From Guillardia theta CCMP2712 (lineage: Eukaryota; Protista; Cryptophyta), in assembly GCF_000315625.1 (NCBI RefSeq), contig NW_005434594.1, forward strand, positions 304,482 through 368,481: DNA of 64,000 nucleotides, given 5' to 3'. Both the position numbers and the translations under genes were made by a program. This document shows, in pieces, positions 42,680 through 50,116 of this stretch. Each line of letters begins with the position of its first letter. The first letter of the stretch is position 1. The notes beneath the pieces were generated by a model. It saw only the letters and a list, made by a program, of their open reading frames with translations. It did no database searches and was not told the DNA's origin.

Positions 42680-44180
42680 TGCCCACACCCCTACCCCCCA
42701 TTTTACCCAAAAATTACCCACCTTTTGTACCCTGTTCCTCCAATCGAGAGTACCCTACCTGTGACACCGTTGCATGAGACCCCACCCCCCTATGAGAGGA
42801 ATTTCATCGGAGACTGACTAGGTACAAGTCAGTACCCCGACCTAGTCGATTTTACTTTAGATGTTACTACCCCACCCGCCTAACAGGACGGATGTTAATT
42901 AACGGATACCACCTACCCCCTCGCAGCACATTTTTCGCCCACCGATCTCCGGTCTACACCCCTATGGCGATGGACCCCCAGGTCACATTGAACCCCACCC
43001 CCCTTTTCCCATCACCTCCCATACATTTGATGGGCAACTTGCACCTACCCCTACCCTCCCAATTACACAAAATGAACACATTTGAAGACTACCCCTCGTC
43101 CGTCCACAATTATACCTACCCCACCCTTTTATATCAACCTGACCCCTGTAGAAACAACCCCTACGGTATGGGATTGCCATTTCTGTACCCGGTATGACCG
43201 TTTCTCAATGACCACCCCCACCCTAAAAACCGTGCTCCACAAAGAAAGAAAGGACCCCGTCACTTTACTACCCCACCCATTATTGACCAACGGTTACGAC
43301 TGCGGCGGAAGGTACCTGTGACCCCTTTTAAAAGTCCCTGACGTTTTTTCACCCGTCCTTTGAACAGTGTTCTACCCCTACTTATTCCCAACCTTGCTGC
43401 AATGAAGACTCATAGCACCGGTAGTGATCTCATGCGAGCGGTCACAATGGGACCCTACCCCCTTAATTATTCCCCAAAGTGACTCAGTCTGACCGGACCC
43501 AGGCAATATACGAGAGTTGCCAACAGCCTGAAACTTGCAACAGGTAGGAGCCACCCGTCCATTCTACCGCAAGGAATTGAATCTTGGGGGTAGTGGGGTC
43601 ACGGGATCGATCCGGCTGAGGACCGAACCGTGACTGACTCACAGTCAGCGGCCGGAGGTCGGGCCGGCCGAACTCCGAACCGTCACGGCCCAGCCGGGCG
43701 GCGGCCGCAGTCCGACGGACTCGGGCCCCGGCGGTCAGTCACCCGTCCGAGCACGCCGCCGCCGGGGCCCTTGAACGTGATCGGACCGTGCCCGGCGAGT
43801 CCGAGTCACCGTCACGGGCGCCCGGGGGCTCGGCTTTGGACTCGCCGGACCGCCGGACTCCCGGACTCAGACCGTACTACGGTACCGTGCCCGCCGTCGC
43901 TGGGTCACTGTCACTCGACTCTGATCGAACGTGAACTGAGTCAGCCCCGGCGGGTGTGACAGGGCCCGCTGCCCGGCGCGGCCCGGGCCCTCCCACAGTA
44001 CGGTCCGACGACTCGGATGCGGGCCGCAGTGCGGCCGCAGGGCAGCCCCGGGCGGCGGCTGCCAGACTCGTGACTCCAGGCTCTGACCGAGTCGGTCGCC
44101 GCCCGGCCGGATCATCGGAGCAGCGGCGGCCACCGCCGCGTCGCTGAGGCTGACTCTGTGACACGGTACCCACTGCGTAC
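42680..44180. promoter_or_regulatory. TACCC block (42680-43600) + GC-palindrome block (43600-44180) upstream of the C2H2 gene
   Basis: One of the clearest copies of the recurrent module. Confidence 0.5.
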
Positions 44181-44235
44181 GAATATGAGGCAAGTTCAGT
44201 GCCACGGTGCTGCTGTGTGGAGTGCCGCCGGGTCA

Positions 44236-45459
44236 TCATGATTTCTTCACTATTCGAATCTTGGATCCGTTCTTCACTCCTGCAGCGCCAATTTCAGAGT
44301 CCAGGTCCAGAACCTGTCAGGGTTGTACGGAAGGTCAGAAGGAAGCGAGCCGATGGTGTGAAGAATGCGTCTGGCATACCTTCCCCTTTCTCTCCGCCTG
44401 GTAGCTGCCGATGTCGTCCACTCCTACCTCGTTGCACCAGGCCTTGACCAGCAGTTTACATTTTTGCGTCGGCTTCACCGTTACTTCCAAGCTCGTGTCG
44501 TCTCCTCCGTAAATCACAAGATCCCATTTGTCTCTCTCCGAGTATTCGACCTCGTCTGAGTCCATGATTTCTTCTACAGCACCAGAGATCGTGCTCACAG
44601 CCTTCATCGTTACTTCTTCTCCAAAAAGCCCCCTTCCCGATCTAAGGTTGCCCAGCACACTCCCGAACAGCTTCCCCGTGCTCGATGCATTCACGACTTG
44701 TGAGACGGCTCCGGCGACAGAGTCAGCCTCCTGCTTCCACTCCGCAGCTCGCTGCCCTGCTTTCTTGGACAACTCGGCGCTGGAGATGGCATCCTTCACC
44801 ACGCGCGCATTCTTCCCTGCTTGAGCTGCTATCATCACGGGATCCATTACAGGGACGCTGAACCTATCGTCAGCCTGGTAGCGCCTCTTCCCTTTCACCA
44901 CGTCGACGTCAATCGGAACTCGATCGGGGTACGCTGCTGTCACGACGTCGGCTGGGGCTTCACAAAACTCGTAGACCTCTGGAATTCCAAAGGCATCCTC
45001 GATTGCGATGATCTTCTTGATGTAACTCTGGAAAGGACCTGGGTTCGCTTCCTCCCCGAAGATGTAGGGCTCAGGAGGGAGCGGGTCCATCTTGCTGCCA
45101 AACCTAGGTCTGACATACGAGTCTAGCTCCGAGAAGTCCTTCCACGTTCTTTGGAATAGCCATGTCCTCGGCTTCTCCCTTTCATCGTTCATGTATTCTC
45201 CTGCGAAGAAGAATGTTCCACCCATGTTTCTCTTCAGCGTCACCGAGACTCTGCCTTCAAGCATCATCATTCGGCGGAGCAACGACGTCTTCTGCTTTCT
45301 CTGTGACAGGCTAGGATAGTTCCCCATCCTCTGACCGGTGATGTAGCTTCCCTCGTTGAGCTTAAGTCCCCGCATCGGAGCCTCCACTGCATGGAACGCG
45401 AAGGCTGCAGGAATCGCAGCCATGCTCAGCGTGCCAAGCAGCACAGCCTGCATGGCCAT
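44236..45459 (-). CDS. Plastid-targeted protein with PX-like domain and C-terminal ubiquitin/SUMO-like domain; 2 exons (intron 44314-44379)
   Basis: Signal MAMQAVLLGTLSMAAIPAAFA-FH + basic transit peptide; WLFQRTWKDFSELDSYVRPRFGSKMDPLPP..FQSYIKKII..EVYEFCE; WDLVIYGGDDTSLEVTVKPTQKCKLLVKAWC..GK/VLDLDSEIGAAGVKNGSKIRIV. Confidence 0.7.
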
Positions 45460-45589
45460 CTCCCGATCTGCCCCTTCCCCGCTCAACCCCACCTAATTCG
45501 TGAGTTTCTGTTGTCGAGAAAACAAATAGAGTCCAACATGGATTCTATAAACCAGCAACGATTTTCCCTTGGCTCCAAAATAGCTTCTG

Positions 45590-46560
45590 ATCGGCCGCCG
45601 GCCGCCGCCCGGCCCGGCCGGACCCGGCGTCTCGGGGCCCGGGGCCGGTCGCCGGGGCGGCGAGTCCGTCCGAGGCTCGGACGCCGGTACTACGGTACTA
45701 CCGTAACACGGCCCGTGACTCCGGCCCCGCCAGGCTGCCACCGCTACTAGGACGGCGTGACTGCCGCGGCCCGCTCCGAGTCCCCGCCGGCCGGGCTCAG
45801 GCTCGCGGGGACGGCGGGCGGCCGGGCCCGTGAGACGGTCACTGCCCGGCCGGGCCCGCCCGCCGGGCCGCACCGTTAGCCTCGCTGCGTCACGAGTCAA
45901 CTTTGCTCAAAGCCAAGTTGAGCTGAGGCCGGTCGGAGCCGGGCTTGGCAGCCCCGGTGACCCGGTCAGCCGGGCCCGGCTGGCACTGGACGACTGAGTC
46001 GGCCCGCCGCGCGGCCGCGGTTGACTACTAGTGACTGATTTTTAACTTAACTTTGAGTAAACGTAACTACCACTGTCGCACAAAATCACGCCAGCCTCAG
46101 AGGCGGGGCTGCAGAGCGCCGCCTCAGGGAAATGATGGGATGTTGGTTTCGAGGTTCATTTTTGAAGTTTCAAATTGTGTCATTAATATTCCTTATTTCA
46201 GAGATTATTTCAAAAGTTCGTTTCAAATAATTCCTTCTCTCACTCCAGCAACGGAGGGGTGGAAGGGTCCATGACCCCTACCCTACCACCTTGTCGGTAG
46301 AACTCGATGCGAAATCGAGGGTAGGGGTGAACGTGGAAGCGGAAATAGGACCCAGGAGTGAAGGCATGTACAATAGTGGGTGGTCTAGCATTGGAAAATA
46401 TCGGGTAGGGGTTATCACCCCACCATGGATATTCGAGGATAATTTCATAATAATGAGGGGTTAATCATGGGTTTTGAATTCTATTGTAGGGTGGGGTATT
46501 TGATCAATGTTATCGAGGGGGGTAGGGTATTGTCGGAAATAGAGCAGAGGGTATAGAAGC
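45590..46560. promoter_or_regulatory. GC-palindrome block + conserved AT motif + TACCC block between divergent genes
   Basis: Contains ACTGATTTTTAACTTAACTTTGAGTAAA (46034-46061). Confidence 0.5.
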
Positions 46561-49294: not shown

Positions 49295-50116
49295 ATGAGC
49301 AGGCAGACGTTGAACCAGGTGCTGAGGTCGTGCCAGGCGATCCTGCCCAAGAGCGAGAGCTACAAGACTCTGCTAGACAGCTCGGCGAACAAGCGAGGGC
49401 TGTCGAGAAAGCTGGACCTGCTGCTGCGGGAGGGGGTCCACGATATGAAGGTGTTCGGGCTGGGTTTCCTGAGGAGCATCGCGAGCAAGGATGAGTACGT
49501 TCACTTCACCTCCTGCTCCTTCCACTTCTACCGGGAGATGGAGCGAGAGCTCGACAGGAAGGCGGAGGAAGGGGCAGTCGTCGGCAGGCTGTGGAGAAAG
49601 TTCCCTGAGCTGCGCAGGGCGGAGAGGCTGAGGGAGGATCTGCGAAACGTGGGTGCAAGCTCGGATCCTACTCTTGTTCCGATGAGCCCTGCCACGACAG
49701 CATACTGCGCATCGATCCGCAGGGCGGGGGAGGAAGAGCAGGGAGTGAGGATAATCGCGCATATGTACGTGAGGTACTTCGCGGATCTTTTCGGAGGAAG
49801 GGCGCTAGGGGCGCCGACCAAGTACGCGGTGCAAGAGCTGAAGCAGAGCCCTCCTCTCTTCTACCAGTGGGATCGTACGGTGGAGCAGGACAGGAGGGCA
49901 TACATCGAGCGGCTCTATGTAGCCATCAACGAGGCGGCGGAGGAGGTGGCGAGCGAGGAGGTGGAGAAGAGGATTGTGGAGGAGGCGAGGAGCGCGTTCC
50001 AGCACAACGCCAACATATACACAGAGGAGGAGGGGCTGTACGGGAAAGCAGCGCAAGGTGCTTACAAGCTGGTGACGGGATACGCCATGGCTAAGGGCCG
50101 ACAGCTGATGAGATGA
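49295..50116 (+). CDS. Heme oxygenase-like protein
   Basis: FYREMEREL..FPELRRAERLREDL..SPATTAYCASI..IIAHMYVRYFADLFGG..LFYQW..IVEEARSAFQHN; candidate proximal His in LREGVHDM. Confidence 0.88.
   Translation: MSRQTLNQVLRSCQAILPKSESYKTLLDSSANKRGLSRKLDLLLREGVHDMKVFGLGFLRSIASKDEYVHFTSCSFHFYREMERELDRKAEEGAVVGRLWRKFPELRRAERLREDLRNVGASSDPTLVPMSPATTAYCASIRRAGEEEQGVRIIAHMYVRYFADLFGGRALGAPTKYAVQELKQSPPLFYQWDRTVEQDRRAYIERLYVAINEAAEEVASEEVEKRIVEEARSAFQHNANIYTEEEGLYGKAAQGAYKLVTGYAMAKGRQLMR

What the first reader, a model, noticed from the sequence alone, without database searches (positions are those of the whole stretch)
44236..45459. PX-like + ubiquitin/SUMO-like domains behind a plastid-stroma-type bipartite leader
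Seen: signal peptide ending AFA-F, a basic transit peptide, a PX-like segment (W..QRTWKDF..L....PLPP...YI..I......V.EF) and a spliced C-terminal beta-grasp-like domain lacking a terminal GG. Established: PX domains are cytosolic/endosomal phosphoinositide-binding modules, and Phe at +1 is associated with stromal import in red-derived complex plastids. Inference: eukaryotic membrane-trafficking modules repurposed inside the plastid or periplastid compartment, an architecture I do not recognise.
Basis: partly seen in the sequence, partly recalled or inferred. Interest (0 to 1): 0.7.

Follow-up and report, generated by a model that had tools for sequence, protein, structure and literature searches.

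The report
Plastid-addressed PX plus SUMO-like protein
The cryptophyte alga Guillardia theta expresses a small, apparently cryptophyte-only protein that joins two modules of the cell's trafficking and ubiquitin systems (a PX fold and a SUMO-like fold) to a conserved plastid import address, although the PX part has lost the residues that normally bind its lipid.

Summary
Window 44236-45459 (minus strand) is the two-exon gene GUITHDRAFT_143930 of Guillardia theta CCMP2712 (385 aa, filed as "hypothetical protein").

- **Gene model:** Transcript contigs from three studies and raw RNA reads confirm the 66-nt intron. They also show that the first ATG (45459), and so the leader, lies on the mRNA.
- **Folds:** AlphaFold models give a PX fold for residues 68-170 (CISK-PX, Z 12.7, rmsd 1.8 Å, 96 of 111 aligned). 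They give a SUMO/ISG15/ubiquitin fold for residues 310-385 (TM 0.89, Z 13). No family member ends in Gly-Gly.
- **Leader:** A signal peptide is followed by Phe at +1 and a basic transit-like stretch. This recurs in 13 of the 15 leader-bearing sequences inspected; Phe is the only near-invariant leader column.
- **Family size:** A profile search of 1.84 billion proteins found 59 hits, 25 of them at E ≤ 1e-10. All named members are cryptophytes (Guillardia, Hanusia, Rhodomonas).
- **Paralogue:** A PX-less Guillardia paralogue shares the conserved motif, helix and Ubl, and has its own AFA-type|F leader.

The PX domain lacks at least two of the four canonical PtdIns3P-binding side chains (three in Guillardia) and is acidic. 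It is therefore more likely a protein-binding adaptor than a lipid sensor. Phe at +1 points to the plastid proper rather than the periplastid space. Localisation and function remain untested.

The parts
44380..45459 (-). Exon 1 (360 codons, Met1 to Lys360) of GUITHDRAFT_143930
   Evidence: Translation. It is 100% identical to P0001. Transcript contigs cover it up to 45463-45483.
44314..44379 (-). Intron of 66 nt, GT..AG. Read-through would end in a stop after 14 codons and truncate the Ubl domain.
   Evidence: A joint skipping 66 nt is seen in 3 contigs from 3 studies and in 3 raw RNA reads. Sequence. The Hanusia model P0002 reads through at the same KGK position.
44236..44313 (-). Exon 2: 25 codons (VLDLDSEIGAAGVKNGSKIRIVKKS) plus TGA. 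It encodes the last strands of the Ubl domain.
   Evidence: It matches the C-terminus of P0001.
45397..45459 (-). Signal peptide, residues 1-21 (MAMQAVLLGTLSMAAIPAAFA), with the predicted cleavage AFA|F
   Evidence: Hydrophobic core with mean Kyte-Doolittle 2.1, and small residues at -1 and -3. This is a heuristic only; SignalP was not available.
45265..45396 (-). Transit-peptide-like region, residues 22-65, beginning with Phe22. It has 8 K/R, 2 D/E and 6 S/T, and ends at a conserved Met cluster.
   Evidence: Phe22 is the only column of the leader conserved in 90% or more of sequences in alignment A3.
44932..45258 (-). PX-fold domain, residues 68-176: three beta strands, helix alpha1, a Pro-rich loop (DPLPPEPY), then helices alpha2-4
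Evidence: pLDDT about 90. The family profile matches PDB PX chains at E 2.3e-5. Pfam PX is above the cut-off in homologues.
44533..44931 (-). Central conserved region, residues 177-309. It is predicted helical but modelled with low confidence, and no known fold could be assigned.
   Evidence: pLDDT 31-54 in both models. Many columns are invariant (PIDV, DPVM, AGK, SKKAG). Only sub-threshold Pfam hits were found (Senescence, Chloroplast_duf).
44614..44655 (-). Most conserved motif of the family, LGNLRSGRGLFGEE (residues 269-282), shared with the PX-less paralogue
   Evidence: Invariant columns. The same motif occurs in L008:1159-1647(-) and in P0020, P0027, P0028 and P0049-P0060.
44239..44532 (-). 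SUMO/ubiquitin-like beta-grasp domain, residues 310-385, interrupted by the intron, with no C-terminal Gly-Gly
   Evidence: pLDDT 88-94. SUMO1 4wjq_C matches at E 1.5e-6, TMt 0.89, rmsd 1.4 Å. ISG15 and SUMO1 match at Z 13.0-13.3. Pfam Rad60-SLD is sub-threshold only.

Best explanation
This is an expressed nuclear gene of Guillardia theta (GUITHDRAFT_143930). It encodes a member of a small protein family that, as far as named sequences show, is restricted to cryptophytes. The domain order is signal peptide, Phe-initiated transit peptide, PX fold, conserved helical linker with the motif NL(R/K)SG(R/K)GLFGEE, and a non-conjugatable SUMO-like domain.

Shown: the gene model, its expression, both folds, the conservation of the leader, the small size of the family, and a PX-less paralogue with the same motif-helix-Ubl module and its own leader.

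Inferred: the preprotein enters the ER co-translationally. Because its transit peptide starts with Phe, it is passed across the periplastid membrane and both envelope membranes into the plastid proper, on the stroma side. There it probably acts as a soluble or peripheral scaffold. The PX fold has lost the canonical PtdIns3P pocket and is acidic, so it would serve as a protein- or peptide-binding module, like the non-lipid-binding PX domains of SNX5/6/32. The motif-helix-Ubl module shared by both paralogues would dock onto a common, still unknown plastid partner.
For: - **Identity and gene model:**. First ATG on the mRNA.
- **PX fold:** Z 11.9 and 12.7 against CISK-PX. The family profile matches PDB PX chains at E 2.3e-5. 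Pfam PX scores 23-34 bits in homologues, above the 21.6 cut-off.
- **Ubl fold:** TMt 0.89, Z 13. The C-termini of all members and paralogues lack GG.
- **Leader:** a signal peptide followed by F is seen in 13 of the 15 leader-bearing sequences inspected. These include Guillardia, Hanusia, several unnamed environmental lineages and the paralogue P0044. The two exceptions are P0031, which is N-terminally truncated, and P0083, which has L-L-F. F22 is the only near-invariant leader column. Net charge is positive.
- **Literature:** Phe at +1 within the ASAFAP motif is crucial for plastid import in diatoms and is conserved in cryptophytes. ASAFind specificity on G. theta was 0.88-0.97 (PMC4329603).
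- **Loss of the lipid site:** in the alignment to SGK3 PX, R50 corresponds to Thr/Ser, K75 to Glu in Guillardia and Hanusia, and R90 falls in a 7-residue gap with no basic residue in any member. R90 is the most conserved PX residue, and R90A abolishes lipid binding (PMC2196448). Every human PX domain lacking one of the four side chains fails to bind PtdIns3P (PMC6449406). The PX domain has pI 4.76.
- **Family size and taxa:** 59 hits, 25 at E ≤ 1e-10, in 1.84e9 representatives. Named members are Guillardia, Hanusia phi, Rhodomonas sp. CCMP768 and R. salina.
- **Paralogue:**
Against: - No localisation data exist. SignalP and ASAFind could not be run, so the signal-peptide and cleavage call is heuristic.
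- The leaders of related proteins are not independent samples.
- The conserved Met just before the PX domain could be an alternative start giving a leaderless cytosolic isoform.
- Loss of the canonical pocket does not exclude binding of other anionic plastid lipids (PG, SQDG, PA, PI4P) through another surface. One clade keeps the PPK Lys and a basic end of helix alpha1.
- The adaptor role and the docking partner are pure inference.
- The central 130 residues could not be modelled (pLDDT < 50).
- Most family members come from unnamed metagenome or transcriptome contigs, so 'cryptophyte-only' rests on four named taxa.
Confidence: 0.5

Rival explanations
1. The protein sits in the periplastid compartment (PPC), the reduced cytoplasm of the red-algal endosymbiont. 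There a PX and Ubl protein would be a relic of, or an accessory to, endosymbiont membrane traffic or the ubiquitin-dependent SELMA import machinery.
For: PX and Ubl modules are cytoplasmic by origin. The PPC is the only plastid subcompartment known to keep ubiquitin-system proteins (SELMA; established knowledge, references listed). The same type of bipartite leader is used for PPC proteins. A conserved Met at the leader/domain junction fits a formerly cytosolic protein.
Against: PPC proteins of cryptophytes and diatoms characteristically lack an aromatic residue at +1 (Gould et al. 2006, cited; details from my own knowledge). Here Phe is at +1 in nearly every member and in the paralogue. The Ubl domain cannot be conjugated because it has no GG.
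Confidence: 0.12
2. The leader is only an ER signal peptide. On this reading the protein is a lumenal or secreted endomembrane protein, or remains in the chloroplast ER, and the 'transit peptide' is merely a linker.
For: The signal peptide is the best-defined part of the leader. Several family members have transit-like regions with a low net charge of +1 (P0064, P0080, P0014). No experimental localisation exists.
Against: Phe immediately after the predicted cleavage site is the only conserved leader position across clades that otherwise share no leader sequence. The region is depleted in acidic residues in most members. A PX and SUMO-like protein in the secretory lumen would be at least as unusual.
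Confidence: 0.1
3. The PX domain is a working lipid reader inside the plastid. It would bind a phosphoinositide or another anionic lipid of the envelope or thylakoids through a non-canonical site and recruit the Ubl module to membranes, for example in thylakoid biogenesis or vesicle-like transport.
For: The PX fold is intact and modelled with high confidence. Human group III PX domains bind other phosphoinositides without a canonical pocket (PMC6449406). K76 and R77 are invariant in A1/A2 and R104 in A1-A3. The P0003-P0007 clade keeps the PPK Lys and an R/K-rich end of helix alpha1.
Against: The secondary-site His/Tyr of helix alpha1 aligns with Asp in nearly all members. The domain is acidic, pI 4.76. 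Guillardia and Hanusia have Glu at the PPK Lys position. No amphipathic segment stands out in the linker (hydrophobic moment ≤ 0.44).
Confidence: 0.2
4. Dual localisation: the conserved Met at the leader/PX junction serves as a second initiation site. A leaderless cytosolic PX-Ubl isoform, perhaps the ancestral function, would then coexist with the plastid form.
For: A Met lies 0-4 residues before the PX domain in 12 of the 13 aligned sequences (alignment A3); the Rhodomonas fragment P0031 has it 6 residues before the domain. Gene callers chose it as the start in three fragmentary models.
Against: All three Guillardia transcript contigs include the upstream ATG in a good context (purine at -3, G at +4), followed by several further in-frame AUGs, so leaky scanning is unlikely. 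In L004 the apparently leaderless model is an artefact of a frame shift. The conserved Met may be only a relic of the ancestral start.
Confidence: 0.08

Closest known systems
PX domains that do not bind lipid (human group I: SNX5, SNX6, SNX32, SNX14) and the SGK3/CISK PX domain as nearest solved structure
   Same: The fold is the same: three strands, helix alpha1, a Pro-rich loop and a helical subdomain (Z 12.7, rmsd 1.8 Å to 1xtn_A). As in group I, at least one of the four PtdIns3P side chains is missing.
   Different: It sits behind a plastid-type bipartite leader instead of in the cytosol or on endosomes. The alpha2 N-terminus is shortened by 7 residues. The domain is acidic. Pfam score is below the cut-off in Guillardia. 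No BAR, FERM, kinase or RGS partner domain is present.
PX plus beta-grasp scaffolds of the cytosol: p40phox and Bem1 (PX ... PB1), and SNX17/27/31 (PX-FERM, whose F1 lobe is ubiquitin-like)
   Same: The order is the same, with a PX fold followed downstream by a ubiquitin-superfold interaction domain. That arrangement is used in those proteins for scaffolding (my own knowledge; not tested here).
   Different: Here the beta-grasp matches SUMO1, ISG15 and ubiquitin best, and neither PB1 nor FERM-F1 appears among the top 50 matches. The spacer is a family-specific 130-residue helical region. No sequence relationship was detected, and the predicted compartment differs.
Integral (type 2) ubiquitin-like domains such as Rad60 SLD2, Rad23/Dsk2 UBL and parkin UBL
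   Same: It is a beta-grasp fold with no C-terminal Gly-Gly, embedded in a larger protein and presumably used as a docking surface. Rad60 SLD2 3rcz_A matches at Z 12.1 and Dsk2 UBL at Z 11.6.
   Different: Those domains act with the cytosolic or nuclear proteasome or SUMO machinery. No such machinery is known in the plastid stroma. Pfam Rad60-SLD reaches only 12.8-18.2 bits against a cut-off of 23.8.
Bipartite topogenic signals of stromal proteins in red-derived complex plastids (ASAFAP motif)
   Same: It has a signal peptide with small residues at -1 and -3, Phe at +1, and then a basic, hydroxylated transit peptide poor in acidic residues.
   Different: The cargo is not a photosynthetic or metabolic plastid protein. 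It is a pair of eukaryotic cytoplasmic-type modules.

Membership tests
PX domain (Pfam PF00787) | Score at or above the Pfam gathering cut-off (21.6 bits) | tested here: inconclusive
   Guillardia scores 13.9 bits and Hanusia 14.8 bits, both below the cut-off. Homologues P0003-P0007 and P0081 score 23.1-33.6 bits, above it. P0064 and P0078 score 16-18 bits.
PX domain (Pfam PF00787) | PX fold: three-stranded sheet, helix alpha1, Pro-rich loop, helical subdomain | tested here: met
1xtn_A matches at Z 12.7, rmsd 1.8 Å, 96 of 111 aligned on a model with pLDDT about 90.
PtdIns3P-binding PX domains (groups II/IV of Chandra et al. 2019) | All four side chains present: Arg and Tyr at the beta3/alpha1 junction, Lys of the PsiPxxPxK loop, and Arg in helix alpha2 | tested here: not met
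   The motif RRY reads R-T/S-W/Y, so the 3-phosphate Arg is lost. No basic residue lies between G135 and Q144 in any member. The loop Lys is Glu in Guillardia and Hanusia. The rule comes from PMC6449406.
Ubiquitin/SUMO-like beta-grasp domains | Beta-grasp fold | tested here: met
   SUMO1 4wjq_C matches at E 1.5e-6, TMt 0.89, rmsd 1.4 Å. Other matches reach Z 13.0-13.3.
Conjugatable ubiquitin-like modifiers (ubiquitin, SUMO, NEDD8, ISG15) | C-terminal Gly-Gly, exposed or released by processing | tested here: not met
   The C-termini read ..IRIVKKS..VVKA..VVQA..VVRA..KVIKA and ..AVVYV. The paralogues end ..VERAD..ITKIE and ..TVRGK.
Rad60-SLD (Pfam PF11976) | Score at or above the gathering cut-off (23.8 bits) | tested here: not met
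   Scores are 12.8-18.2 bits in the members that hit at all.
Stromal bipartite targeting signal of cryptophytes and diatoms | N-terminal ER signal peptide | tested here: met
   The hydrophobic core has mean Kyte-Doolittle 2.1, with an A-x-A site. This is heuristic only; SignalP was not available.
Stromal bipartite targeting signal of cryptophytes and diatoms | Aromatic residue (Phe) at +1 of the transit peptide | tested here: met
   The site is AFA|F in Guillardia. F is the only leader column conserved in 90% or more of alignment A3.
Stromal bipartite targeting signal of cryptophytes and diatoms | Transit peptide with net positive charge, rich in Ser/Thr and poor in Asp/Glu | tested here: met
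   Residues 22-65 have 8 K/R, 2 D/E and 6 S/T. The net charge is weaker (+1) in three other members.
Stromal bipartite targeting signal of cryptophytes and diatoms | Demonstrated import into the plastid | not testable with these tools
   This needs GFP fusion, immunogold labelling or plastid proteomics. No paper mentions the gene.
PX-BAR sorting nexins | BAR domain of three long helices (about 200-250 aa) after the PX domain | tested here: not met
   The linker is 133 aa, with predicted helices of at most 38 residues at low confidence. No BAR or Vps5 Pfam hit was found.

The most novel reading that the evidence does not exclude
The PX-Ubl protein and its PX-less paralogue are parts of a previously unseen, eukaryote-derived interaction system working inside the cryptophyte plastid. 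It could be a Ubl-docking pathway for protein turnover or assembly, or a membrane-remodelling route at the envelope or thylakoids. That would mean host or endosymbiont cytoplasmic trafficking and ubiquitin-type modules were re-addressed to the stroma by adding a bipartite leader to a formerly cytosolic protein.
Probability: 0.12. Interest if true: 0.85.

Novelty: new variant of a known kind. Interest (0 to 1): 0.52.

Why it matters
PX and ubiquitin-like domains are hallmarks of the eukaryotic cytoplasm. Neither is an accepted component of the plastid stroma.

A conserved, expressed, lineage-specific family carrying both behind a stromal-type leader would be a clean example of cytoplasmic modules re-addressed into an organelle. 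The PX-less paralogue with the same Ubl module and leader strengthens the case. The family would also offer a handle on cryptophyte-specific plastid biology.

It gives a directly testable case for the Phe +1 sorting rule using an unconventional cargo. If localisation fails, the finding reduces to a divergent secretory or cytosolic PX protein of modest interest.

Tried and rejected
- **Solved structures by sequence:** nothing for the whole protein, so it is not a modelled subunit of any solved cryptophyte photosystem or antenna complex.
- **Central region 177-309:** it stayed at pLDDT < 50 with alignments of 7 and of 32 sequences. The weak Pfam hits (Senescence at E 0.05-0.07, Chloroplast_duf at 0.02, YqeY, FlgK_D1) are inconsistent between members, so I reject them.
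- **ESM Atlas:** the search by features gave no usable hit. The search by shape gave only Ubl-containing clusters at TM ≤ 0.33 and no two-domain look-alike.
- **Literature:** no paper mentions the locus tag or protein number. None combines PX domain with cryptophyte plastid or periplastidial compartment. PX, chloroplast and thylakoid together gave two irrelevant papers.
- **Earlier notes of this scan:** nothing by words, and nothing on this gene by place.
- **GC-rich flanks:** I examined them for terminal repeats of a mobile element and found only short low-complexity GC matches, so that idea is rejected.
- **Loose 30-nt contig end beyond 44232:** it has no match in the window. I treat it as an assembly chimera rather than a 3' UTR intron.
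- **PX-BAR, PX-FERM and PX-PB1 readings:** considered and not supported (see the membership test).
- **Complex prediction:** not used, because no specific partner is claimed.
Full report
**What is there.** Window 44236-45459 holds one minus-strand gene sitting between two GC-rich (70-77%) low-complexity spacers.
- The open frame starts at ATG 45459 and runs 360 codons to 44380.
- A 66-nt GT..AG intron (44379-44314) follows.
- A second exon of 25 codons ends at TGA 44238-44236.

I searched exon 1 by reference. It is 100% identical to the public protein GUITHDRAFT_143930 of Guillardia theta CCMP2712 (P0001, 385 aa). NCBI calls it a hypothetical protein, and UniRef gives it a name beginning "Ubiquitin-like domain". 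For whole-protein analyses I used the stored database protein P0001, whose C-terminus equals exon 2 as translated.

**Expression and start codon.** Contigs of three runs from three studies, and three raw reads of a 2026 RNA-seq run, carry the joint that skips exactly these 66 bases.
- The contigs reach 45463, 45472 and 45483. There is no ATG between 45483 and 45459.
- So the first AUG of the mRNA is the one that opens the leader, in a good context (G at -3, G at +4).
- Whether ribosomes also start at the Met cluster at residues 63-65 cannot be decided here.
- Coverage ends about four bases after the stop codon (44232).

**The two folds.**
- Pfam alone is weak on the Guillardia sequence: PX 13.9 bits (cut-off 21.6) and Rad60-SLD 12.8 bits (cut-off 23.8).
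- Relatives clear the PX cut-off at 23-34 bits.
- A family profile finds PX chains in the PDB: designed CISK-PX at E 2.3e-5, then SGK3, SNX16 and SNX25.
- An AlphaFold model from a 32-sequence alignment has pLDDT about 90 over residues 66-175 and 305-385.
- Residues 68-170 superpose on CISK-PX 1xtn_A with Z 12.7, rmsd 1.8 Å and 96 of 111 residues.
- Residues 310-385 superpose on SUMO1, ISG15 and ubiquitin with Foldseek E 1.5e-6, TMt 0.89, rmsd 1.4 Å and Z 13.0-13.3.
- No member of the family ends in Gly-Gly, so this is an integral Ubl domain and not a modifier.
- The 130 residues between the domains are conserved and predicted helical, but they stayed below pLDDT 50 and matched nothing credible.

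**The leader.**
- Residues 1-21 form a hydrophobic signal peptide ending AFA.
- Phe22 follows.
- The next 44 residues carry 8 K/R, 2 D/E and 6 S/T.

The important point is comparative. Of the 15 leader-bearing sequences inspected, 13 have a signal peptide followed directly by Phe:
- Guillardia and Hanusia;
- the environmental lineages P0005, P0081, P0042, P0064, P0078/P0073/P0009, P0080, P0013 and P0014;
- the paralogue P0044.

The two without a clear site are these:
- P0031 is N-terminally truncated, but it still shows ..SNA|F.
- P0083 has L-L-F after its likely cleavage site.

Otherwise the leaders are unalignable between clades. In alignment A3 the only leader column conserved in 90% or more of sequences is this Phe. 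One apparently leaderless model (P0003) turned out to have the MFARS... leader hidden by a 1-nt frame shift in the contig.

Phe at +1 within the ASAFAP motif is crucial for plastid import in diatoms and is conserved in cryptophytes. A predictor based on it had specificity 0.88-0.97 on G. theta (PMC4329603). That cryptophyte PPC residents lack the aromatic residue (Gould et al. 2006) is from my own knowledge of the literature. The likely destination is therefore the plastid proper, not the periplastid space. None of this is experimental, and I could not run SignalP or ASAFind.

**Is the PX domain a lipid reader?** Probably not in the canonical way. Four lines of evidence point the same way.
- In the HMMER alignment to SGK3 PX, the family's invariant R-T/S-W/Y lies on R49-R50-Y51. 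The Arg that holds the 3-phosphate is therefore Thr or Ser.
- K75 of the PPK loop is Glu in Guillardia and Hanusia, although it is Lys in the P0003-P0007 clade.
- R90 falls in a 7-residue gap, and no member has any basic residue between G135 and Q144. [quoted passage not shown]
- In the systematic human survey, every PX domain lacking one of the four side chains failed to bind PtdIns3P, and a sizeable group bound no lipid at all (PMC6449406).

The His/Tyr of the secondary site aligns with Asp in nearly all members, and the domain has pI 4.76. I therefore read it as a group-I-like, protein-binding PX fold. The rival reading, a non-canonical lipid site, stays open at about 0.2.

**Family and paralogue.**
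- A profile search of 1.84 billion cluster representatives returned only 59 proteins at E ≤ 1e-3 and 25 at E ≤ 1e-10, most of them fragments.
- The only members with organism names are Guillardia, Hanusia phi, Rhodomonas sp. CCMP768 and Rhodomonas salina, all cryptophytes.
- At least six clusters below 50% identity exist, so the family is old within its lineage.
- The G. theta genome has at least 25 loci above the Pfam PX cut-off. This gene is not among them, so it is a divergent outlier.
- The genome also holds a paralogue on contig 25 (GUITHDRAFT_152020, filed as a partial 123-aa model). It has its own ..AVATA|F leader, the same GGILGNLKSGRGLFGEE motif, a helix and a Ubl domain, but no PX.
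- The paralogue is 33% identical to P0001:255-385, E 9e-24. Similar short proteins occur in the environmental data (P0020, P0027, P0028, P0037).
- The conserved unit is thus motif-helix-Ubl, and PX is an addition in one branch.

**Mechanism, with its status.**
- *Shown:* gene, splice, expression, folds, conserved leader, degenerate lipid pocket, narrow family, paralogue.
- *Inferred, about 0.75:* import across all four membranes to the stromal side.
- *Inferred, about 0.35:* the protein is a soluble or peripheral adaptor. Its PX fold would bind a protein or peptide, and its Ubl module, shared with the paralogue, would dock on a common partner.
- *Unknown:* the partner, and the role of the central region.

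**Comparison with known systems.** It works most like cytosolic PX scaffolds that pair a PX fold with a ubiquitin-superfold docking domain (p40phox and Bem1 with PB1; SNX17/27/31 with FERM-F1), and like integral-Ubl adaptors (Rad60, Rad23/Dsk2). It is not a member of any of these:
- no sequence link was found;
- the beta-grasp is SUMO-like rather than PB1 or F1;
- the spacer is family-specific;
- the predicted compartment differs.

Full-text searches found no description of a PX domain inside a plastid or periplastid compartment. The nearest theme, PI3P and apicoplast biogenesis, concerns the cytosolic face. These searches do not cover subscription journals.

**Verdict.** This is a new variant of known kinds: PX and Ubl folds in a new architecture with a new predicted address. 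It is moderately interesting. Everything beyond anatomy hinges on a localisation experiment.

Noticed in passing
G000:C25:116040-116405 (-), equal to L008:1159-1647 (-): This is the PX-less paralogue GUITHDRAFT_152020. The public model is 'partial' (123 aa, ending ..KRMS), but the open frame continues into a complete Ubl domain. It has its own signal peptide ..AVATA|F and the same GRGLFGEE motif.
   Followed up: partly
P0002 (Hanusia phi, EukProt) C-terminus; window 44314-44379: The Hanusia transcript model reads through an unspliced intron at the same KGK position as the Guillardia intron. This gives it a spurious Pro/Gly/Arg-rich tail. The intron position therefore seems conserved.
   Followed up: partly
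window 45265-45273 (Met63-65) and alignment A3: A Met lies 0-4 residues before the PX domain in 12 of the 13 aligned sequences (MLEG, MYEG, MGxGYxG); the Rhodomonas fragment P0031 has it 6 residues before the domain. It could be a relic of the ancestral start codon from before the leader was added, a processing-site feature, or an alternative start.
   Followed up: no
L004:1-330: The Logan contig encoding P0003 has a 1-nt frame shift. This hides an MFARS... signal peptide and makes the protein look leaderless.
   Followed up: yes
window 43600-44200 and 45560-46000: The gene (53-57% GC) is bracketed by low-complexity spacers of 70-77% GC built from short CCGG/GGCC-type repeats. No long terminal or inverted repeats were found.
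   Followed up: partly
window 44228-44236: RNA coverage and all three transcript contigs stop about 4 nt after the stop codon, so the 3' UTR appears to be almost absent. One contig carries 30 unrelated bases beyond that point, which are not found in the window.
   Followed up: partly
window 49295-50116 (+): This ORF has a clear heme oxygenase domain (PF01126, E 2.4e-23). No signal peptide is visible in the ORF as it stands, so upstream exons are possible.
   Followed up: no
P0045, P0048 and P0084 (unnamed Logan contigs): These are distant PX-only proteins sharing RRTW...DF and VYEFLxxPADV with the family. P0045 has a leader ending ..VNS|F. They may be a related plastid-addressed PX protein in another lineage.
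   Followed up: no
G000, whole genome: Guillardia theta has at least 25 loci scoring above the Pfam PX cut-off, which is a rich canonical PX repertoire. The gene studied here is not among them.
   Followed up: no
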